Below, one piece after another: positions 47,142-58,676 of a DNA stretch of 64,000 bases (position 1 is its first letter; each line of letters starts with the position of its first letter). The stretch spans positions 310,001-374,000 of the forward strand of contig OZ251248.1 in assembly GCA_965240325.2 (NCBI GenBank). The letters run 5' to 3'. The stretch comes from Rebecca billardiae RCC1528. Lineage: Eukaryota > Protista > Haptophyta. The notes below the pieces were generated by a model, which worked only from the letters and a program-made list of their open reading frames with translations, did no database searches and was not told where the DNA came from. The position numbers and the translations under genes were made by a program.

Positions 47142-50100
47142 ATGTGCGGCAACCTCGGCCTCCTCCTCGCGATCGACGCGCGTGGGAAGCTCGTGATCAC
47201 GATCGTGCCCACGAATGGCGGCGCCCCACCCCCCGTCGCGCTCAAGAAGCCGGCGGAGGTGCTCCGCGAGATGGTCGCCGCGACTGAGATCCGAGGCGGA
47301 CAGGCGGGCGGCATCTCGGCGTTCGAGTTCTCGCGCAAGCCTGGGGCGGCGCCGACGGTTGGGCGCGTGCGCGCGATCGCTCGCAAGTACGCCGCCCGCC
47401 CCCTCGCGCGCGTTCTCCGCACACGCGCGCCCGTCGCCGCCGCCGTCCCAACGGGCTGCGCATGATTGTGCGCGTGCGTGCGCTCCTGCCGGTCGCGCCG
47501 CCGTGCCGGTCGCGCCGCCGTGCGCGCGCAGGCGCTACCCGCTCGCCGACGACCTCTCGCGGATGTTCGCGCGGCAGTGCCCGTCCGGGACGTCGCGCAA
47601 CGCGTCGTGCCTCTCCGTCGTCGGGCACACGCGCTTCGCCACGGGCTCGGCGAACAAGCTGCCCGAGCTCCACCCGTGAGTGCCCTGCGCGCTCGGCGCG
47701 TCAAGCCCAGACTGCGCTTGCTCACCCCAGCGCTGCGCAGCTCTCTCCCAGCCTGGAGGCCGCGAGCCGGCCGCGCGGCGCGGGCGCGGGGTGCCGCCCG
47801 GTCGGCGCGCGCGCACCTCGCGCGAGGCGGCGTGCACTCACGCGGTGTGCCCCCCGCCCCCCCCCCCGCGCCGCCGCACCGCGCACCGCGCCCCCGTCCG
47901 CGCGCGCACGCGCGCGCGCTCGCCAGTCACGACTGGGGCCACTCCGGCTACGGCGGCGAGCGCCGCGCGTTCCCGGCGGAGCGCGTGTGGCGCTGGTCGG
48001 AGGAGGCGCGCGCTCTCGTGCCCGAGACGCTGCGCGTCGGCGTGCACCTCTCGCACAACGGCGACTTCGACGCGCTCGAGGCGTACGCAAGTTCGGCCGG
48101 TCTCATGCTGAACGGCGAGCTCGGCCTGTGGCTCGAGCGCGCGCTGCACACGCCCAACTCGACGACGGGCGACTCGCCGAAGCTGGCCGGGCTGCTGCAG
48201 CTGCTCCGGGTGCAGGGGCGCTGGGGCGCGGCGGCGCGCCTCGCGTACCTCCGCGTCGTCTGCCGGCTGCCAACCGACGTGAGCGGCGGGCAACCGCTCA
48301 CTAAGGCCGCGCCCAACACTTGCCCAAAGCCAGCGCATTGGGAGCGCCAGTGGGCGCCGCTGTTCGAGGCGGCGTGGGCGGAGCACGGCGCGGCGGTGCT
48401 GCGGCCGGTGGAGAGCGGCGCGTCGACGGCGGGCGCGTCGCGCGGCAGCCGCGGCGGCAGCGTGCCGCGCCGCGGCAGCGCCGCAACCGCCGGCGGCGCC
48501 ACCAGCGCCACCGGCGGCGCCACGCGCTACTCGATCGACCTGGGCGGAGCGCGCGCCCTGCGGGACGCGCTGGTCGCCAGGCTGCGCCCGGACGAGCGCG
48601 AGGCGGTGCACCCGGGCGCGGGCGGGTGGGACGAGGGGACGGTGCTGGCGTTCGTGCACCACACGATCCGCGGCTTCCTGCGCGCCGACCTGACGGGCGC
48701 GCTCACCGAGGCTCTCAGCCGCGCGCACGGCTCGTTTGGCGTGCAGGCGCATTGCACGCTGGAACCGGGGGTGGTGGTGTTGGGTTGCAAGGGGCAGCCG
48801 ATGGGCGTCGCCTTCTCCGACACGCTGCCGCTCGTGCTCTTCGGCTCGGAGGCGGCCGCGCTGCACGTCGCGGTCACGGCGGACGGCCAGCCGCTCGGCC
48901 GGCAGCTCGACCTCGACGAGTCCGGGGAAATAGTTCGGCTCGGCCCGCCGAGCGCCCTGCACCACGGCACGTTCACGCGCGGCGGCGCCGCGCGCCACCA
49001 GCGGCACGGCGGCGCGGCCGCGGCCGCCGCTGCCGCCGGCGGCGGCGGCGGCGCGGCGGCGGGCTCGCGCGGCTCGGCGGCCGCGCCGCCGCCTGCGTTC
49101 GGCCTCGTCCTCGGCGGCGGCCACCTCACGCTGCGCGCGTACTCTCTCGTGCGCTCGGTCGAGTCGTCAGCCGCCGAGCTCGAGCTGCGCGCTGGCACGA
49201 TCGGCGCGCCGACGCCGCGCTTCGAGCCGCGCGCCGACCTCGTCGCGCACGACCTGGCGGAGACGCCGCGCGTGCTGCGCGAGATCGACGACGACTGGTC
49301 GGCGGACGGCGGCAGCGTCGCCGGCGGCTCGCGCGGCGGCGGCGGCGGCGGCGGCGCGGCCTCGCCCAACCTCGCCGCCGCGACTGAGCTCGCGCGCCTG
49401 CTGCTGCATCGCATGGAGGTGCGGCGCTCGGCGCGGATGGACACGGTGGACCTGCTGATCGGCGGCGTGGAGAGCTCGCTGTGGCTCGCGCAGCAGTTCG
49501 CGGCGGACATGCGCGCCGTCTTCCCCTCGCTCACCGTCAAGTGCGTCTCGACCAACAAGCTGCTCGGAATCTCGGGATTTTCTCCGCGAAGAACCTTTTT
49601 CGCCGGCACGGAGCGGGTGACGGTCGAGCAGATCGCGGACGCGGCGGTCCTGCTGATCTCGCAGTCCGGGCAGACGTTCCCCACGCTGCACGCGACGCGG
49701 CTGCTCGCCTCGCTCGCGCCGGAGCGCGTCTGGCTGCTCACCGGCACGGCCGGCTCCAAGATGGCGAAGGCCCTCGCCGCCGGCATGCACGCGCGCGGCC
49801 GGCGGCTTGAGCCTCGGGTGCTGCTCACTGGCTCCGGGCACAGGCCTGCCGAGCCGTCGTCGCTCGCCGTGGCGGCGATGCACCACACGCTGACGCACCT
49901 GCTGCTGCACGTCGCGACGTACGTGCGCAACACCGCACCCGGCTCGAGGCTCGTTCAGCCGTGGGAGAAGGAGGAGGAGGCGGAGGAGGCGGACGGCGCG
50001 CGCGGCGCGGACGCGTCGGCGGGCGCAGCGCTCGGCGCGCGCGCGCACCCCCTGGGCGCGGCGGGCGCGGTGGCAGCCGGCGCGGCGGGCGGAGTGCTCG

Positions 50101-50252
50101 GGGCGCACGGGGCGTCCAGCGCTCGCGCTGACGGACTCGGCGAGCCGCCGCAGCCCATCGCTGCCGCCGCGGGCGCGAGCGCGCACGCCGGCGCGCCGGC
50201 CGTCGGCCGCGCCGCGGACCCCGCCGCCACCGGCGGCGCGGCGGCCGCCGCT

Positions 50253-50305
<53 letters not shown>

Positions 50306-53213
50306 GCCGGGGCTGGAGCTGGGAGCCGTCCACCTGGCCCACACGTCGCTGGCGCAGCGGGCGCCCGCGCTGGGCTCGCAGCTGCTCGGCAGCAGCGACG
50401 GCGAGGACGACGCGTGCAGCGTGAGCACCGCCCCGCCCTCCTCCTCGGCGGCGCCTGTGGGCGACGACTCGACGCTGTCGCTGCCCACCAGTGTCGCAGT
50501 GGGCGCGGACGGTGCCGCAGTGGGCGCGGACGGCGCCGCGGCGGGCGCAGACGGCGCCACGGCGGGCGCGGACGCGCCGAACGCCGCAGCGGGCGCGGAG
50601 GGCGCCGCGCCCGGCGCAGAGCACGTGCTCCCCGCGTCCTCGGCGGTGGGAAGCACCGCCAGCCTCGCCCACGCCCCCACCAGCACGGCTGCGGCCGACG
50701 GCGGCGGCTCGGCCAATCAGAGGCCGTGGATGCGTGGGCTTGATTGCGTGCGGAGCGCGCGCGGCCTGCCTCCGCACGACTCGGCCGCCGACGACGCGCG
50801 CGCCGCGGCCGACGCCGTCGGCTCGGAGCGCGCGGCAGCAGCTGCCGCCAAGCCCGCGACGTCGGTAGGCGCGGCGGCGGACGACCGCCTCCCTCTCCCA
50901 GCCGCCGCGCTGCGCGCTGCGGCAGCCGGGTCAGAGCCGGCCGCGCCGCCACACGCCGACGCCTCGGCGGCTCACGCGGCCGCGGCTGCGGCTGCGGCGC
51001 CGGCGAGCCCGGAGCCGCAGGGCGGCGCCGGGCAGCCCGGCGGGCTGCTCGCGGGCGCGAAGGCGGAGAGCGCGCCACTGCTGCGCGTGCACACCGACGC
51101 CACCGGCGTCAGCAGCGGCGAGGAGCAGCAGCACACGTCGGGCGCTCTGATCGAGCGGCCCGGCGCGCAGCGCGGCGCCGGCGCGGCGCGCAAGGCCAAG
51201 CCGGCGGCGCGGCACCGGCGCTCGGCGCTCGACTCTCGCGAGCTGCTCATCCGGCTGTCGGACGGGTGCATCGCCGACCTGCGGCTGATGGTGTCGACGT
51301 GCGTCGTGCCCAACCTCGAGACCATCGTCGGCGTCGACAGCGACGGCCGACCCCTCGCGCCTGCCGCCGGCGCCGCGCGCGGCGGGAACGGCGCGCGCGG
51401 GCCCTGGTCAGCGTGCTCGGCGCTCGGCGCGGCGGCGGGCTGCGCGCCGCGCGCGCCCTACCCGGCCGCGCAGGAGTCGCACGGCAGCACGAACCCGCGG
51501 ATGCGCGCGCGCGTGCACCGCTGGCTCAGCGGCAGCACGGGCGGCAGCGGCGCCGACCCCGAGTACGGCTCGGCGCGCGAGCCGGCGGCGGTCGCGGGCG
51601 TGCAGCCCCACGACGCGCTCGTGGCGCAGGGCCGCGCGTGGGCGGCGCACGTGCGCGAGCCGTGGCGCGCGCTCTGCCTCACCGGCGCGTACGTGCTCTT
51701 CTCGGTGACCCTCGGCGTGCCGGTCGTCTCGCTGCTCGCGCGGCTCGCGCTGCGCGCCGCCGGGCTCCCCGCCGCCTCCCTCGGCTGGTCCCTCGACGCG
51801 CCTCTCTCGCAGTCGGGGCAGCCAGCCGCCATCATCGCGCTCGGCTTTGTCGCGCGGCTCGCCGACGCCTTGATCTACATCTACTGCGCCAAGCTGCTCA
51901 CCTGGGGCCTGCGGCTGGCGGAGGGGCGGCCGCTGTGGGCGCGGATGGGCAAGCGGACGCTCGTGATCGTGGACACGCCGACCAACCACCAGATGCTCGA
52001 GGCCTTCTGCTCCAAGCTCTTCGCGCTCTCCTACTCGTTTGCGTCGGTGGACGTGCACGGCGCGAACGGCGTCGATCGTGAGTCGCTCGCTCGCGCGCGG
52101 CGCGCGCGCGCACGGCGGCGCGGCGCGCGCGCGCGCGCACGGCGGCGCGGGGCGGGGAATGCCGCGCGCCCCGGGCGCGCCGAGCGCGGCATGGCCGGCC
52201 ATCCGACTGAGCCCTGCCGCGCCCGCCGCCCGCCGCGCCGCGCAGACTTTGTCCACCGCTTCACGCACCGCGTGGCGCGCGGCGTGCTGGTCGCGGTCGG
52301 CCGGCCGGACGGGCGGCTGTGCTGCCTCGCGAAGACGGAGGCGTCGCTCCTGCTCGCGTGCAAGCAGGCGGCCTTCATCCAGAACCCCGCGTACTCCATG
52401 CGCAACGACTCGGGCAACGCCGCCGAGATCGTCTCCGTCGGGCACAACCCCTTCCACCCGTCTGGGATCGTGACGCACATCCCGCTGCCGTCGCGCGGCC
52501 GGCGTCGGTTCGTCGACGAGCTCGTGTACGAGCGGCTGAACGTGGTGCAGGGCGAGCTCACGGCGAAGCCCGCGCGGATGCTCAGCGCGATCACCACCAA
52601 GATGATCACGAGCATCACCGCGCAGGGCTACGCGAGCCTCGCGCGCGGCGGCGTGCGCGGCATGGAGCAGTCGATCCTGTACCACGTCTTCCGCGAGCTG
52701 CCGATGGGCGCGCACTTCATCCCGATGGACGAGCGCGCGCGGCCGCACCGCTCGGCCGAGCAGGTCGGCGCGGCGCACCTCGCGCGCGCGCACGTCAAGG
52801 GGCTGCCGGCGGCGCGCAAGCGCGCGCTGCTCGACCTCGCCGCGAGCGAGCGCGGCGCGAGCGACGACCCGGCCGTGCGGCTCGCGTTCGCCGCCAAGCT
52901 CGACGCGCGCACGCACGAGATCCAGGACCGGCAGATCATCCTGCAGCACTTCTACGAGTGCCGCATCGCCGCGCTCGAGCGGTACGTGAGCTTCTGCGTC
53001 ATCTTCCACGCGATGGCCGCCGAGAGCGCGCGGCCGTGGCTCCGCCGGGCGTGGAACCCCGCGCGCTCGCAGTCCAACCTGCGCGTCGCGACGACGGCGT
53101 CGCCCGTGTCCGCGTCGGACGCGCACTCCGACAGCGAGCGCGTCTTCGCCGAGGCGGTCGTTCGGCGCAGGGGCGTCGCCACCAAGCTGCGCGGCATCAG
53201 CTCGCACTTCTGA
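47142..53213 (+). CDS. GlmS/GFAT-like protein: class-II (Ntn) glutamine amidotransferase + SIS domain(s) with two hydrophobic segments; exons 47142-47386, 47532-47675, 47927-52077, 52246-53213
   Basis: N-terminal MCGNLG (Cys nucleophile), EIRGGQAGG, GHTRFAT, ELHPH, SHNGDF and GDSPK. The SIS motif is LISQSGQT. Hydrophobic helices lie near 51670-51910. Three GT-AG introns have consistent phases. Confidence 0.8.
50249..50305. repeat. (GCC)n tract encoding poly-Ala
   Basis: Trinucleotide run inside the low-complexity insertion of the GlmS-like gene. Confidence 0.9.
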
Positions 53214-53952: not shown

Positions 53953-56876
53953 ATGGCTGAGTGCATTGGCGTGCCGCTTACCCAAGAGTGGTCCGGGTGA
54001 GCGCTGTCGAGCGACGCGCGCCATCGTCGCGCCGCCAGCCGCGATTGCGCGGCCTGAGGGCTAGTCGTGACTGATCGGTCGCCGTGCGCTCGCGGGACCG
54101 ACTGCGCCGCAGCGATTTCATCGGCGTGGGCTACTTCGCCAGCGTCTTCGGCGCCTTCGTCGGGCTGAGCACGATCACGTACGCGCTCACCGTCCTCAAG
54201 CACCCCGCGTTTGCGCACTGGTTCTACGTGTTCGTCGCGTCGTCGGGGATGTCGATCGGAGGCAGCTCGATCTGGACGATGCACTTCGTCGGTGCGCGCA
54301 CGAGCGCGCGCGCGCCGTTCGCGCGCCGTGACTGCTCGCCGTGCGCTGCCCCACGGCACGTGCTCCCAACACTGACGCAACGCCAAGTGGCTCGCGCGGC
54401 ACGCGTGCGCCCCCGCTCGCCTGGCTGCAGGTATGAGGGCGCTCACGGTCGTCCGCTGCGATGGCGTCCCTGTACCCAAGAAGTACAACGTCGTGCTCAC
54501 AGTCATCTCGCTGGTCGCCGCGGTCGTAATCGGCGCCTTCTGCATGTACCTCGTCATGCCGATGAAGCCTGCCAAGCAGGACGGCGATCCCGAGGCTGCC
54601 GAGAAGGTGAAGCGGCGCACTGACAAGCTGGAGTACTGGCCGACGCCGTTCACGTTCCGCGGCACGATCGTGAAGATCGTCAAGTTCGACCTGCTGCGCT
54701 TCGCCGGCGCGACGTTGACGCTCATGGTGGGCGTGTGCGTGATGCACTACATGGTGCGCGCCGTGCGCGAGACCGCACGTCCCTTGACCTCCGACCCGCG
54801 CGCGCACTCCCGCCTCGGCTCGCGCCACCCTTCCTTCTTCCGACCGGCCTAATCTTTCCCCGTTCGCCCACCACCCGCCCGCCTGCCCGCCCGCCTGCGG
54901 CTCACCAGGGCATGATCGCGCAGCAGGGTCCGTACGTCAAGCACTTCTCACCCGGCGTGATCACCGCCTCCGCCGTGATCGCGCTCGTCGCGTCCGCCGC
55001 CGGCCTCTTCATCGTCGTGCAGGTGGCCGTGATGGGCCAGGTCAACTCGATCGGCCCGCGCGCGGTCGCGGCCGTGATCATCGGCGTCGCGGTGAACGCG
55101 ATGCACTACACCGGCATGTTCTCCGCGACGTACGTGTACACGGGCGACGACACGAGCTCGCTCACCCACGGCTTCGGCCCGGCGATGTCCGTCGACCCGC
55201 TCGTGGTGTGCATCACCTCGCTCACCGTCGGCATCATGCAGCTGGTCGTGTGCCAGCATTACTCGGAGAAGCTGTACGTGCGGCAGCAGGCGATCAACGA
55301 CGCGCTCGCGCGCAAGCTGCCCAAGGACGTGGGCGAGAAGCTCAAGCAGATCTATGACGCGGTGCTGCCCAACGACGGCGGCGCCGTCGCCAACTACATC
55401 CCCGAGCTCGCCGCAGCCGACCCGAACCGTTTCGGGATCGTGATCTGCGACGTGAACGGGGAGGTCCACGCGGTGGGCGACTCGACCGAGCCGGTCACGA
55501 TCCAGTCGTGCTGCAAGCCGATGCTGTACATGCTCGCGCTCGAGATGGCCGGGGTCGAGACGGTGTCGGCCAAGATCGGCACGGAGCCTTCCGGCCAGCC
55601 CTTCGACGCGCTCAGCATCGACTCTACCGACAAGGCGTACAACCCGTGCGCGCACTCGCGCGCGCGCCGCGCGCGCGCGCGAGTGCGCGCACGGCCACCG
55701 CCGCGCGACCACCACGCGCACGTCTGACACACTCGCCGCGTGCTCCCCGCGCCGCCGCCGCCTGCCGCGTCGCGCCGCAGCTTCGTGAACGCGGGCGCGA
55801 TCGCGAGCGCGGGCATCCTCCTCTCCACGCCCGGCGGTGCGGAGGACGCCGACGGCGTGTACAGCATCGCAGAGGCGGTGTGCCGAGACATGTCCAAGGA
55901 GGGCGTGCGCCAGCGCCTCGACCGCAAGGTGCTCGCCTCCGAGTCGGAGACGAACTCGAACAACCGGTGGATCGCCGAGGAGCTGGGCAAGAAGAAGATC
56001 GTCGAGGGCAACACGGCCGCCGCGCTCGACGCGTACACGATGGCGTGCTCCATGCTCACGACGGCGGAGGACACCGCGGTGATGGCCGCGACGCTCGCCA
56101 ACGGCGGCCGCAACCCGCTCACCAAGGAGGAGATCTTCGACACCGAGATTGTCGAGCACACGGTGACGGTGATGATGTCGTGCGGCATGTACAACGGCGC
56201 GGGCAAGTGGATCACCGACGTCGGCATCCCGGCCAAGTCGGGCGTCGCCGGCCTCGTGATGGGCGTCGTGCCCGGCGTGTGCGGCATCGGCATCTTCAGC
56301 CCGCGGCTCGACGCGAACGGCAACTCGACGCGCGGCGTCGCGGTCGCCAAGATGGCCTCGGAGCGGCTCGACCTGCATGTGCTCAAGAAGCAGAAGAAGA
56401 AGGGGCCGCTAGGGCTCTCGCCCTCGAAGAACACGCGCCGCACGCAGGACTCGGTCAGCGTCTTCTCATCGCAGGGCAGCGTGGACGTGCACGGCGACTC
56501 CTTCCAGCAGACGCCGCCGAAGCACGGCGGCGGGCTGCGCGTGTCGGCTGAGAACTGGTTGAGCAACATGACCGGCGGCAAGAGCGCCGATCACCTGGCC
56601 GCCGACGACGCGTCGGGCAACGGCGCGCCGAAAGCGCGCTACATGCGCAAGTCGCCGCGGGGGAGCGTCGAGGGCCTCTCGGAATCGACGAGCAGGGCCA
56701 CGAGCCCCGCGTGGACGCCGTCGCGGGCGCATTCGCGGGCGCCCCCGTCGGCTGCGCCGTTGGCGCACGGCGCGCCCGCGGCGGACGCGGTCGTCCATTT
56801 CGGCGCCGCGGATGCGCCGGTGACGACGCGTGTCACGCTGTCGCCGGCTGCGGAGCTGACAGACCTGAACGTCTGA
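53953..56876 (+). CDS. MHYT integral-membrane sensor domain fused to glutaminase, 792 aa; exons 53953-53996, 54113-54291, 54431-54753, 54909-55645, 55781-56876
   Basis: Three MHYT repeats (IWTMHFVGM, VCVMHYMGM, VNAMHYTGM) lie within hydrophobic helices. Glutaminase motifs follow: GAVANYIPELA, TIQSCCKP, GTEPSG, YNPFVNAGAI, TLANGG, SCGMYNGAG, GIPAKSGVAG and SPRLDANGNS. Repeat 3 and the glutaminase N-half share one exon. Four GT-AG introns give consistent phases (2379 coding nt). Confidence 0.88.
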
Positions 56877-57239: not shown

Positions 57240-58676
57240 ATGGCCGCGGCGGCGCGCTTCATCCCGTCCGATCTGGCCCGCCTGCACTCGCTGGTGGCAC
57301 CTGCCGAGCTGAATGGCCACGTGGTGATGGTCACCGCGCCGTACAATGACGAGACCGACCGCTACCGCGTCCAGCCGGCCCTGCCCGACGCGGCACCGCT
57401 CAGCGTGCGCCCGGCCAACCTGCAGCCGCTCGACGACGAGACGGCGCGCGGCGACGCGATCGTGTACCTCCGCTCAGTGGCCGAGCTGATGGCGGTGCTC
57501 AACGACGCCGAGCCGCAGCGCTGGGTCAAGCTGGGCCTGCTCGCGTCGGCCGCGCCGCCCGCCGACGTGCTCTCGGCGATGCTCGGCGTCCGCATCACGT
57601 CGGATGCGGAGCGGCTCGAAGCGTACGTTCGCGCCGAGGTGCGCGCGAGCGCGTTCGGCGCGCGATTCCCGGGCGTCTTCGAGCAGGTCGAGCCGGTGTG
57701 CCCGCGGTACGGCGCCGCCTCCTCCTACCCGCACGGCACGCGCCGATGCCCGTGCACGCGCCGGCCGGGCAACCTCGAGGTGACCCCCGCCGAGCTGGCG
57801 CTCCTGCACCTAGATGAGCCGGCCGCTCGCAAGTTCGTCCGCTCGGGGGTCGAGCCCGCGGCGCAGGTGCGCGAGAAGTCGGGGCGCACGCTGTTCCACC
57901 GCGCGGTCGTGATGGGCTTCCCCGACTTCGCGCACTGGCTCGCCACCGACGAGTCGCTGCCCGCCGCGTGGCGCGTGCCTTCGCTGCTCACCCGCGCCGA
58001 CTGCTACGGGCAGACGCCTTTGCACTGCGCGGCTGCCAACTCGTACGAGGGGCTGGTCAGGCTGCTGCTCGCCGCCGGCGCCGATCCGAGCGGCGCGGAC
58101 GAGGACGGGTACACGGCGCTCCACGGCGCGGCGGGCACCGGCGTGGGCGCGGCGGAGCTTTCGCTCGGCGTCGCTCGCGCGCTGCTGAGCGCAATCGAGC
58201 AGCGGGGCGGCGCGGACGCGGCGCGCGCCGCCATCATGGCGCCGGCGGGCGCGGGGCCGGACACGCCGCTCTGCTTCGCATGCATGCCGAAGCGCAAGCG
58301 CGCCAGCCAGGTGCAGCTGCTCCGCCTCTTCCACGAGAAGGGCGCGCGCTTCCTGCCCAGCTGCCGCGCGCGCGCCGACCACCCGTGCACCAACTTCATG
58401 TGCCACGTGCGCGGCTGCGTGGATATCTGCGGCCTGCCGGAGGGGGAGGCGCTGCGCCGGCTGCGCGGGGAGCAGGGGAGCGCGGCGGCGTGCGCCGCGT
58501 GCGACGCGCCCGGGGCGACGCTCCAGTGCGCGCGCTGCCGCATCGCCATGTACTGCGGCCGCGAGTGCCAGCGCCGCCACTGGCGGGCCGCGCACAAGGC
58601 CGAGTGCGGCGCGCGCGCCATGCAGCAGCACGCAGAGGCGCGGGCCTCCCACTCCCAGGCGGCCGCCGCGCACTGA
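57240..58676 (+). CDS. Ankyrin-repeat and MYND zinc-finger protein, intronless, 478 aa
   Basis: Ankyrin motifs GRTLFHRA, YGQTPLHCAA and DGYTALHGAA. The C-terminus is CAAC...CARCRIAMYCGRECQRRHWRAAHKAEC. Confidence 0.85.
   Translation: MAAAARFIPSDLARLHSLVAPAELNGHVVMVTAPYNDETDRYRVQPALPDAAPLSVRPANLQPLDDETARGDAIVYLRSVAELMAVLNDAEPQRWVKLGLLASAAPPADVLSAMLGVRITSDAERLEAYVRAEVRASAFGARFPGVFEQVEPVCPRYGAASSYPHGTRRCPCTRRPGNLEVTPAELALLHLDEPAARKFVRSGVEPAAQVREKSGRTLFHRAVVMGFPDFAHWLATDESLPAAWRVPSLLTRADCYGQTPLHCAAANSYEGLVRLLLAAGADPSGADEDGYTALHGAAGTGVGAAELSLGVARALLSAIEQRGGADAARAAIMAPAGAGPDTPLCFACMPKRKRASQVQLLRLFHEKGARFLPSCRARADHPCTNFMCHVRGCVDICGLPEGEALRRLRGEQGSAAACAACDAPGATLQCARCRIAMYCGRECQRRHWRAAHKAECGARAMQQHAEARASHSQAAAAH

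What the first reader, a model, noticed from the sequence alone, without database searches (positions are those of the whole stretch)
53953..56876. MHYT membrane sensor fused to an apparently active glutaminase
Seen: after splicing four introns, one 792-aa protein has a multi-pass membrane domain with three MHYT repeats (MHFVGM, MHYMGM, MHYTGM). A short helical linker joins it to a complete glutaminase domain that retains the S-x-x-K dyad (QSCCK), NAGAI and both catalytic-region tyrosines (LDAY, CGMY). A Ser/Arg-rich disordered tail follows. The fusion junction lies inside one exon (54909-55645), so it does not depend on my splice model. Known: MHYT is a mainly bacterial sensor proposed to bind copper through Met/His and to sense O2, CO or NO. 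It is normally coupled to signalling outputs (GGDEF/EAL, histidine kinase, LytTR), whereas glutaminases are normally soluble. Inference: this could be a receptor-enzyme that gates glutamine -> glutamate + ammonia by gas, redox or copper status, or that uses the glutaminase domain as a glutamine sensor. I know of no described example, but cannot verify novelty without a search.
Basis: partly seen in the sequence, partly recalled or inferred. Interest (0 to 1): 0.92.

Follow-up and report, generated by a model that had tools for sequence, protein, structure and literature searches.

The report
MHYT membrane sensor fused to glutaminase
A real five-exon gene in a GC-rich eukaryote joins a seven-helix MHYT membrane sensor to an intact glutaminase, and it belongs to an uncharacterised protist family of membrane-tethered, receptor-like glutaminases that may turn outside signals into glutamine breakdown.

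Summary
Exons 53953-53996, 54113-54291, 54431-54753, 54909-55645 and 55781-56876 (+) splice into a 792-aa protein. It has three MHYT motifs, a complete glutaminase A domain with every catalytic and substrate residue, and a disordered tail. The domain junction lies inside one exon.

The protein is collinear, with no indel at any splice junction, with about ten orthologues. These include transcriptome-derived proteins (Pyramimonas MMETSP1081, a Gymnodinium smaydae assembly) and eukaryotic metagenome contigs.

- **Conservation:** Three His and two outer-face Cys are invariant. The spacing from TM7 to the glutaminase is fixed at 47 residues in 10 of 11 measurable members.
- **Wider family:** MHYT-glutaminases sit in one well-supported clade with single-pass glutaminases that carry PBP-like, NMT1-like or cadherin-like ectodomains.
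- **Modularity:** The same MHYT type also occurs alone and fused to another C-terminal domain.
- **Literature:** No paper held both 'MHYT' and 'glutaminase'. No solved MHYT structure matched. No AlphaFold DB cluster covered the full length.

Regulation of catalysis by the sensor is inferred, not shown. No sequencing run was listed, so this locus has no direct RNA evidence. An unchecked first-reader note of this scan (s1-363199) reports a second MHYT-glutaminase elsewhere in the same genome.

Verdict: real, conserved and uncharacterised; a new variant of known sensor-enzyme fusions.

The parts
53953..53996 (+). Exon 1 (aa 1-15): short acidic N-terminus with invariant Cys4 (53962-53964); predicted to lie outside the cytoplasm
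   Evidence: The N-terminal C-x-G...L..W motif aligns with orthologues without a gap. Cys4 is invariant in every member whose N-terminus is present.
54113..54291 (+). Exon 2 (aa 15-75): TM1 (aa 17-41), TM2 (aa 49-76) and the first part of MHYT motif 1 (MHFVG)
   Evidence: Intron 2 splits the Gly75 codon inside motif 1.
54431..54753 (+). Exon 3 (aa 75-182): end of motif 1, outer loop with invariant Cys84 (54457-54459), TM3, basic cytoplasmic loop aa 118-160 (10 K/R), TM4 with MHYM of motif 2
   Evidence: Pfam MHYT 21.4 bits; loop charges; alignment with bacterial MHYT proteins.
54909..55645 (+). Exon 4 (aa 183-428): TM5, TM6 with motif 3 MHYTGM (55101-55118), TM7 (55191-55253), 20-aa linker (55254-55313), and the first third of the glutaminase with Tyr345 and the Ser382-x-x-Lys385 dyad (55506-55517). 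This exon holds the fusion junction.
   Evidence: One stop-free piece hits both PF03707 (33.1 bits) and PF04960 (92.4 bits). It aligns to human GLS residues 231-331.
55781..56372 (+). Exon 5, first part (aa 428-625): the rest of the glutaminase domain, with Asn431, Glu482, Asn489, Tyr513, Tyr565 and Lys580-Ser581
   Evidence: PF04960 197.6 bits, profile 92-285. Residue-by-residue alignment to YbaS (1u60) and M. luteus glutaminase.
56373..56876 (+). Exon 5, second part (aa 626-792 plus the TGA stop): polybasic KKQKKK stretch, then an Ala/Ser/Gly/Pro-rich tail that is not conserved and is probably disordered
   Evidence: The equivalent tail of orthologue P0151 has pLDDT below 50.
53997..54112 (+). 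Intron 1 (116 nt, GTGAGC...CAG)
54292..54430 (+). Intron 2 (139 nt, GTGCGC...CAG)
54754..54908 (+). Intron 3 (155 nt, GTGCGC...CAG)
55646..55780 (+). Intron 4 (135 nt, GTGCGC...CAG)

Best explanation
Shown: this is a genuine gene for a 792-aa integral membrane enzyme. Seven TM helices form an MHYT domain. Three motif histidines (H72, H180, H248), their flanking Met residues and two invariant Cys (C4, C84) lie at the outer face. The N-terminus is outside and the C-terminus inside. TM7 runs on as one helix through a linker of fixed length into a complete glutaminase A domain, which keeps every catalytic and substrate-binding residue. The protein belongs to a conserved eukaryotic family of MHYT-glutaminases. 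That family is nested in a clade of membrane-tethered, receptor-like glutaminases. Inferred: the MHYT domain binds copper, as shown for bacterial CoxC, and senses a small ligand or state (O2, CO, NO, redox or Cu). The signal passes through the rigid TM7-linker helix, probably in a dimer, and changes the packing or oligomeric state of the glutaminase domains. This switches hydrolysis of cytosolic glutamine to glutamate plus ammonium at the membrane. The disordered tail may add regulation by phosphorylation.
For: Gene and fusion; orthologues are collinear at all four junctions. Orthologues from transcriptomes carry the same fusion, so fused mRNAs exist in relatives. Orthologues lie on eukaryotic contigs. 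Active enzyme: Y345, Q381, S382, K385, N431, E482, N489, Y513, Y565 and S581 match the residues of human KGA and E. coli YbaS shown by mutagenesis or structure to matter. They are invariant in 10 of 11 family members. The orthologue model matches YbaS and GLS at target-normalised TM-score 0.92-0.94. Sensor: the MHYT profile hits, all three motifs align with bacterial MHYT proteins including CoxC-like ones, and the three His are invariant. CoxC's MHYT domain senses CO/O2 in a copper-dependent way (PMC11347149). Topology: positive-inside counts. Coupling: TM7 is a continuous helix 277-314 in the pLDDT-89 model. The distance from QHY to YIPEL is exactly 47 residues in 10 of 11 measurable members, although the linker sequence varies. 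Modularity: the same MHYT clade occurs alone (P0032) and with an unrelated C-terminal domain (P0302). The same TM-linker-glutaminase cassette follows PBP-like, NMT1-like and cadherin-like ectodomains. Bacterial glutaminases are often fused to cNMP-binding, STAS or receiver domains, so regulated glutaminases have precedent at the level of domain architecture.
Against: There is no expression or splicing evidence for this locus: no run was listed. No biochemical data exist for any member. The ligand of eukaryotic MHYT domains is unknown. Even in bacteria only CoxC has been validated, and the signal for NbdA is still called unknown (abstracts). Some paralogues have lost the motif Met residues (P0005, P0173), and one has lost the catalytic dyad (P0010), so the two halves need not always work together. 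The structure models are monomers of orthologues, not of this protein. No coordinates could be inspected, so convergence of the three His on one site was not measured.
Confidence: 0.5

Rival explanations
1. The membrane domain is only a tether. It anchors and perhaps oligomerises a constitutively active glutaminase at a particular membrane, for example beside ammonium, glutamine or glutamate transporters. The enzyme's place matters, not a sensed signal.
For: A whole clade of related glutaminases is membrane-tethered by a single TM helix at the same short distance, so tethering itself seems to be selected. Motif Met residues are lost in P0005 and P0173 while the glutaminase stays intact.
Against: A single helix is enough for tethering. 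Keeping a 7-TM domain with three invariant His and two invariant Cys over 35-50% sequence identity points to a specific function. The single-pass relatives carry ligand-binding ectodomains (PBP-like, NMT1-like), which suggests sensing rather than plain anchoring. The linker length is fixed.
Confidence: 0.3
2. The glutaminase domain is not the output. It acts as a glutamine-binding sensor or scaffold, while the MHYT domain or the tail carries out the effect.
For: One distant family member, P0010, has Ser to Ala and Lys to Ser in the dyad and Tyr565 to His. This shows the fold can persist without catalysis.
Against: In this protein, and in 10 of 11 members, every catalytic residue is intact. The tail is not conserved. 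No effector function is known for MHYT domains.
Confidence: 0.08
3. The fusion is an artefact: two neighbouring genes, a pseudogene or a mis-assembly read as one protein.
For: No RNA data for this locus could be obtained. This exact protein was not found in the protein collections searched.
Against: The junction lies in one uninterrupted exon. The reading frame is open over 792 codons with canonical introns. Independent orthologues, including transcriptome-derived ones, have the same architecture and the same linker length.
Confidence: 0.03

Closest known systems
CoxC of Afipia carboxidovorans (MHYT-LytTR) and other bacterial MHYT proteins such as NbdA, MucR and DgcW (MHYT-GGDEF-EAL) and MHYT histidine kinases
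   Same: An N-terminal membrane domain with three Met-His-Tyr/Phe motifs at the outer ends of TM helices, followed directly by a cytoplasmic output domain. CoxC shows copper-dependent CO/O2 sensing (PMC11347149).
   Different: The output here is a metabolic hydrolase, not a DNA-binding, c-di-GMP or kinase domain. The host is a eukaryote. The domain is at most about 30% identical to bacterial ones. It has a eukaryote-specific Cys pair, a 6-residue outer-loop insert and a roughly 40-residue basic cytoplasmic insert.
Bacterial glutaminase A (E. coli YbaS/GlsA1, B. subtilis YbgJ, Micrococcus luteus salt-tolerant glutaminase)
   Same: The same serine-dependent fold and the same catalytic and substrate residues. 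The best PDB sequence match is M. luteus glutaminase 3agd (E 4e-36). The tree places the clade among bacterial-type glutaminase A sequences.
   Different: Those enzymes are soluble. This one is fused to a 7-TM domain and has a long disordered tail.
Single-pass receptor-like glutaminases of algae and protists (e.g. P0177 and P0038 of Pelagophyceae sp. CCMP2097, named 'beta-lactamase/transpeptidase-like protein'; P0180, P0029, P0020, P0008, P0013)
   Same: They fall in the same glutaminase clade (99% SH-aLRT). They share the N-terminal helix motif KLP(D/E)NVQEV and a TM helix about 35 residues before the Pfam glutaminase start.
   Different: They have one TM helix and an extracellular PBP-like, NMT1-like or cadherin-like domain instead of the MHYT domain. 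In this protein the shared motif has diverged to KLPKDVGEKL.
Animal kidney- and liver-type glutaminases (GLS, GLS2)
   Same: The catalytic core and residues, and activity that depends on oligomeric state (established knowledge of GLS; a GAC filament structure, 8ec6, appears).
   Different: They belong to a separate clade with ankyrin and EF-hand-like flanks. They are mitochondrial and soluble, with no TM domain.
Bacterial glutaminase fusions with STAS, cNMP-binding or receiver domains
   Same: A glutaminase joined to a signalling or regulatory domain in one polypeptide (Pfam architectures).
   Different: The regulatory domains are cytoplasmic and C-terminal (STAS, cNMP), not a membrane sensor. 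As far as the searches show, they too are uncharacterised.

Membership tests
MHYT domain (Pfam PF03707; Galperin's MHYT sensor) | Profile match above the curated cut-off | tested here: met
   33.1 bits (two stretches) on the exon-4 piece and 21.4 bits on the exon-3 piece, against a cut-off of 21. Orthologues score 50-74 bits.
MHYT domain (Pfam PF03707; Galperin's MHYT sensor) | Three repeats, each with a Met-His-Tyr/Phe motif at the end of a TM helix, six TM helices plus a seventh | tested here: met
   MHFVGM, MHYMGM and MHYTGM lie at the C-terminal ends of TM2, TM4 and TM6. They align column for column with bacterial MHYT proteins. Orthologue models have seven helices and pLDDT 89-92.
MHYT domain (Pfam PF03707; Galperin's MHYT sensor) | Motifs near the outer face, output domain in the cytoplasm | tested here: met
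   The positive-inside count is at least 12 K/R on the inferred inner loops against 3-5 on the outer loops. The N-terminus is acidic. This is a prediction only.
MHYT domain (Pfam PF03707; Galperin's MHYT sensor) | Copper binding and sensing of a diatomic gas | not testable with these tools
   Shown only for CoxC (PMC11347149). No solved structure resembles the domain (best TM-score 0.25).
Glutaminase (Pfam PF04960; glutaminase A, EC 3.5.1.2) | Full-length profile match | tested here: met
   Profile positions 1-83 (92.4 bits) and 92-285 (197.6 bits) of 286, across exons 4 and 5. The NCBIfam glutaminase A models also hit.
Glutaminase (Pfam PF04960; glutaminase A, EC 3.5.1.2) | Ser-x-x-Lys catalytic dyad and the catalytic Tyr | tested here: met
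   S382 and K385 match KGA S286 and K289. Y565 matches KGA Y466 and YbaS Y244.
Glutaminase (Pfam PF04960; glutaminase A, EC 3.5.1.2) | Substrate-binding residues (KGA Y249, Q285, N335, E381, N388, Y414, and the oxyanion-hole segment) | tested here: met
   Y345, Q381, N431, E482, N489, Y513 and the K580-S581-G-V segment.
Glutaminase (Pfam PF04960; glutaminase A, EC 3.5.1.2) | Serine beta-lactamase-like glutaminase fold | tested here: met
   Tested on orthologue P0151, which is 50% identical overall. Foldseek target-normalised TM-score is 0.92-0.94 with rmsd 1.2-1.7 A to 1u60, 3czd and 8ec6. This protein itself was not modelled.
Glutaminase (Pfam PF04960; glutaminase A, EC 3.5.1.2) | Glutamine hydrolysis | not testable with these tools
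   Needs an enzyme assay.
Eukaryotic membrane-tethered (receptor-like) glutaminase clade (unnamed; defined here) | Placement in the clade on a glutaminase-domain tree | tested here: met
   A clade of 16 rows (10 MHYT-fused, 5 single-pass, 1 fragment) has 99% SH-aLRT support. This protein is sister to Pyramimonas P0154 at 95%. The method was a quick IQ-TREE search, so support is provisional.
Eukaryotic membrane-tethered (receptor-like) glutaminase clade (unnamed; defined here) | TM helix at a fixed short distance before the glutaminase, and the KLP(D/E)NVQEV helix | tested here: met
   The spacing is conserved. The motif has diverged here to KLPKDVGEKL, a variant shared with Pyramimonas.
Animal-type GLS/GLS2 | Ankyrin-repeat C-terminus and EF-hand-like N-terminal flank; same clade | tested here: not met
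   No Ank or EF-hand hits. The Ank-bearing glutaminases form a separate clade at 99% support.

The most novel reading that the evidence does not exclude
Marine algae and other protists have an unrecognised class of receptor enzymes, 'receptor glutaminases'. Interchangeable sensors (the copper- and gas-type MHYT domain, PBP-like solute-binding ectodomains, cadherin-like domains) drive a common TM-linker-glutaminase cassette. Regulated hydrolysis of cytosolic glutamine, the cell's nitrogen-status metabolite, would then itself be the transmembrane signalling output. This gene would be the gas-, redox- or copper-sensing member.
Probability: 0.35. Interest if true: 0.85.

Novelty: new variant of a known kind. 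Interest (0 to 1): 0.62.

Why it matters
MHYT is one of the few candidate membrane sensors for O2, CO and NO, and only one bacterial example (CoxC) has been validated. A version wired to an easily assayed enzyme would give a direct biochemical read-out of MHYT signalling, and would do so in a eukaryote.

Glutamine is the central nitrogen-status metabolite. A receptor that destroys it in response to outside cues would link environmental sensing to nitrogen metabolism in phytoplankton in a way not yet described.

The shared TM-linker-glutaminase cassette behind several different sensor domains suggests a general and testable design principle, not a one-off fusion.

Tried and rejected
- **RNA evidence:** The look-up of sequencing runs listed no run for the gene (kind rna) or for exon 5 (kind any). 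Searches failed because the machine was busy. Read laying therefore could not be used.
- **This protein in the collections:** it did not appear in the exhaustive representative search (best hit 52% identity) or in the word-based search. No annotation of this exact gene was seen.
- **Organism:** it was not identified. The notes of this scan gave no identity. I ran no further search on a neighbouring gene.
- **Literature:** the library held no paper with both 'MHYT' and 'glutaminase'. Searches on eukaryotic MHYT (hits were apple MhYTP2), membrane or receptor-like glutaminases in algae and STAS/cNMP glutaminases found nothing relevant.
- **Structure:** the spliced 792-aa protein has no single reference, so I modelled orthologues P0151 and P0032 instead. 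Foldseek of the full-length model against AlphaFold DB clusters and the ESM Atlas matched only the glutaminase half. The MHYT model matched no solved structure. Model coordinates are not returned, so His-His and Cys-Cys distances could not be measured.
- **Bacterial origin of the fusion:** rejected. Every fusion hit whose context I checked lies on a eukaryotic contig, and no bacterial MHYT-glutaminase appeared.
- **Membership of animal GLS/GLS2:** rejected.
- **Upstream neighbour:** the ORF 47466-53213, read as one frame, gave no Pfam hit. No glutamine-metabolism gene cluster can be claimed from it.
Full report
**Observation**

The window is about 69% G+C around the locus. The + strand between 53953 and 56876 carries five exons: 53953-53996, 54113-54291, 54431-54753, 54909-55645 and 55781-56876. 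The four introns are short (116, 139, 155 and 135 nt), with GTGAGC or GTGCGC donors and CAG acceptors. Spliced, the exons give 2379 nt, or 792 codons plus TGA.

Pfam finds MHYT (PF03707) on the exon-3 piece (21.4 bits) and the exon-4 piece (33.1 bits, two stretches; cut-off 21). It finds Glutaminase (PF04960) on exon 4 (profile 1-83, 92.4 bits) and exon 5 (profile 92-285, 197.6 bits). NCBIfam glutaminase A models agree. The exon-4 piece has no stop and holds both domains, so the fusion does not depend on any splice call. The only correction concerns the tail, which is Ala/Ser/Gly/Pro-rich rather than Ser/Arg-rich.

**Gene model checked against relatives**

An exhaustive HMMER search with the exon-4 piece found proteins that match across both halves: P0001, P0003-P0006 and P0010. 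A word-based search added P0151-P0154 and P0173. All but P0005 carry both Pfam domains, and P0005 still aligns across the MHYT region.

Two of these come from a Gymnodinium smaydae transcriptome assembly (EukProt). One comes from Pyramimonas (MMETSP1081). The rest come from JGI, ENA and Logan assemblies.

The spliced protein aligns end to end with these orthologues at 35-51% identity. All four exon junctions fall inside the most conserved motifs: the N-terminal ..EW.. stretch, MHFVG|M, MHYM|GM and YNP|FVNAGAI. None of them leaves an indel. Fused mRNAs therefore exist in relatives, and the model here is exact.

The contigs I checked are eukaryotic. P0005 lies beside genes for F-actin capping protein, TMEM237 and a P2X receptor. 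P0003 lies beside Sas10/Utp3. P0010 lies beside a RINGv protein. P0004 is one piece of an intron-split copy. No bacterial MHYT-glutaminase turned up. No sequencing run was listed for this locus, so direct RNA evidence is missing.

**Membrane domain**

Hydropathy gives seven TM helices. The three motifs sit at the C-terminal ends of TM2, TM4 and TM6, and they align column for column with bacterial MHYT proteins, including CoxC-like MHYT-LytTR proteins.

Loop charges favour an outside N-terminus and an inside C-terminus. The TM3-TM4 loop has 10 K/R, and the N-terminus is acidic with none. This puts the motif His and Met residues at the outer face and the glutaminase in the cytoplasm, as in the bacterial model.

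Across the family H72, H180 and H248 are invariant. The Met residues are lost in one subclade (P0005, P0173). Two cysteines, C4 and C84, both predicted to be outside, are invariant in every member that covers them but absent from bacterial MHYT proteins. They could form a disulfide or act as extra metal ligands; this is inference. Relative to bacteria, the eukaryotic branch also has a 6-residue outer-loop insert and a basic cytoplasmic insert of about 40 residues.

An AlphaFold2 model of the stand-alone relative P0032 is confident (pLDDT 92). It matches no solved structure (best TM-score 0.25). It does match many AlphaFold DB clusters, several named 'MHYT domain-containing protein', with C-terminal extensions of varied length; one 1028-aa entry is named 'PDE10A protein'. 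The tool hid the organism names; from the accession series I take several of these to be eukaryotic (alveolates, a thraustochytrid, fungi), which I did not verify. independently lists a chytrid MHYT protein (Chytriomyces hyalinus).

The only experimental proof of MHYT function is CoxC, where copper is required for CO sensing and O2 antagonises it (PMC11347149).

**Glutaminase domain**

Alignments to human GLS, E. coli YbaS and M. luteus glutaminase give the equivalences below.

| This protein | Human KGA | E. coli YbaS |
|---|---|---|
| Y345 | Y249 | not mapped |
| Q381 | Q285 | not mapped |
| S382 | S286 | S66 (inferred from the motif) |
| K385 | K289 | K69 (inferred from the motif) |
| N431 | N335 | N117 |
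| E482 | E381 | E161 |
| N489 | N388 | N168 |
| Y513 | Y414 | Y192 |
| Y565 | Y466 | Y244 |
| S581 | not mapped | S260 |

These are the residues shown by structure and mutagenesis to bind substrate or catalyse the reaction (PMC4929687, PMC5695133). They are invariant in the family except in P0010, which has Ser to Ala, Lys to Ser and Tyr to His.

The model of orthologue P0151 has pLDDT 89 and pTM 0.75. Its glutaminase half superposes on YbaS and GLS at target-normalised TM-score 0.92-0.94 and rmsd 1.2-1.7 A.

**Junction**

In the P0151 model TM7 is one continuous helix (residues 277-314). It leaves the membrane and leads to the first helix of the glutaminase fold (321-332).

The distance from the QHY motif at the inner end of TM7 to the YIPEL motif of the glutaminase is exactly 47 residues in 10 of the 11 members where it could be measured (the other has 44). 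Within that span the 20-residue linker sequence varies freely. A fixed length with a free sequence is what a rigid helical transmitter would show.

**Wider family**

The closest non-MHYT glutaminases are also membrane proteins, with one TM helix about 35 residues before the Pfam glutaminase start. Their N-terminal regions carry PBP_like_2 (P0177 of Pelagophyceae sp. CCMP2097, P0029, P0020), NMT1 plus an ephrin-receptor-like repeat (P0180), or cadherin-like and Big_9 domains (P0013).

They share the helix motif KLP(D/E)NVQEV with the MHYT fusions. On a tree of 92 glutaminase domains all of them form one clade (99% SH-aLRT). This clade is separate from the ankyrin-bearing animal-type clade and nested among bacterial-type glutaminase A sequences. 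This protein is sister to Pyramimonas P0154 (95%). MHYT-fused and single-pass forms interleave with weak support, so a single origin of the MHYT fusion is neither shown nor excluded.

The same MHYT type also occurs alone (P0032, 48% identical to this protein) and fused to a different C-terminal domain that Pfam does not annotate (P0302). Unchecked first-reader notes of this scan report, in this same genome, a second MHYT-glutaminase, MHYT fusions to a HET/TIR-like domain and a receptor-like glutaminase. Those notes are leads, not evidence.

**Interpretation**

Shown: a real, intact and conserved gene for a 7-TM MHYT domain joined by a fixed-length helix to a catalytically complete cytoplasmic glutaminase.

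Inferred: copper binding, sensing of a small ligand, and control of catalysis through the TM7-linker helix, perhaps through the oligomeric state, which governs the activity of animal glutaminases. The modular use of both halves, the invariant His and Cys residues and the fixed linker favour a sensor-output relation (my estimate about 0.5) over plain tethering (about 0.3). A non-catalytic role (about 0.08) or an artefact (about 0.03) is unlikely.

**Novelty**

The library held no paper with both 'MHYT' and 'glutaminase', and the other literature searches found no study of membrane or receptor-like glutaminases. No AlphaFold DB cluster or ESM Atlas cluster covers the full length. The sequences do exist, unstudied, in public collections. 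The principle of a sensor domain fused to an enzyme is well known. I therefore rate this a new variant of a known kind, of good but not exceptional interest until activity and regulation are tested.

Noticed in passing
window 54292-54430 and 54754-54908: Introns 2 and 3 interrupt MHYT motifs 1 and 2 at almost the same place: MHFVG|M in phase 1 and MHYM|GM in phase 0, one nucleotide apart. Motif 3 has no intron. This may be coincidence or a trace of how the repeats or introns arose.
   Followed up: no
window 47466-53213 (+): A 1915-codon open frame lies directly upstream on the same strand. Another note of this scan (s1-365533) calls it a GlmS-like amidotransferase. Translated as one frame it gave no Pfam family at E <= 0.001. 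This region reaches about 80% G+C, where long chance ORFs are common.
   Followed up: partly
window 57240-58676 (+): The downstream single-ORF gene (478 aa) has ankyrin repeats and a C-terminal MYND zinc finger.
   Followed up: partly
L005:1476-3509 (protein P0010): An MHYT-glutaminase paralogue from another eukaryote has lost the catalytic dyad (Ser to Ala, Lys to Ser) and the catalytic Tyr (to His), but keeps the three motif His. It is a likely pseudo-enzyme member of the family.
   Followed up: partly
protein P0302 (JGI metagenome, 821 aa): The same eukaryotic MHYT type is fused to a C-terminal domain of about 500 aa with no Pfam hit. Its SHQW...PDP...YVWVDY pattern recalls HET/TIR-like domains (my recollection). 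This fits notes of MHYT-HET/TIR fusions in this genome.
   Followed up: partly
proteins P0177, P0029, P0020, P0180, P0013, P0008: These are single-pass glutaminases with extracellular PBP_like_2, NMT1 plus ephrin-receptor-like, or cadherin-like domains. The TM-to-glutaminase spacing is conserved at about 35 residues. P0177 is annotated in Pelagophyceae sp. CCMP2097 only as 'beta-lactamase/transpeptidase-like protein'.
   Followed up: partly
L001:2786-5690: Two multi-PAS-domain genes lie directly upstream of, and divergent from, the MHYT-glutaminase paralogue P0005. The same arrangement appears in a second sample (L002).
   Followed up: no
L003:6001-8264 and L004:5351-7760: In two other eukaryotic contigs the MHYT-glutaminase gene was called as two or three adjacent pieces (MHYT, MHYT plus glutaminase, glutaminase). 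This is as expected for intron-containing genes read by a prokaryotic gene caller.
   Followed up: no
proteins P0158, P0161, P0009, P0012 and others: Many bacterial proteins of 610-700 aa hold two tandem complete glutaminase domains. P0158 is from the cyanobacterium Coleofasciculus chthonoplastes and P0161 from a planctomycete; the others come from unnamed sources.
   Followed up: no
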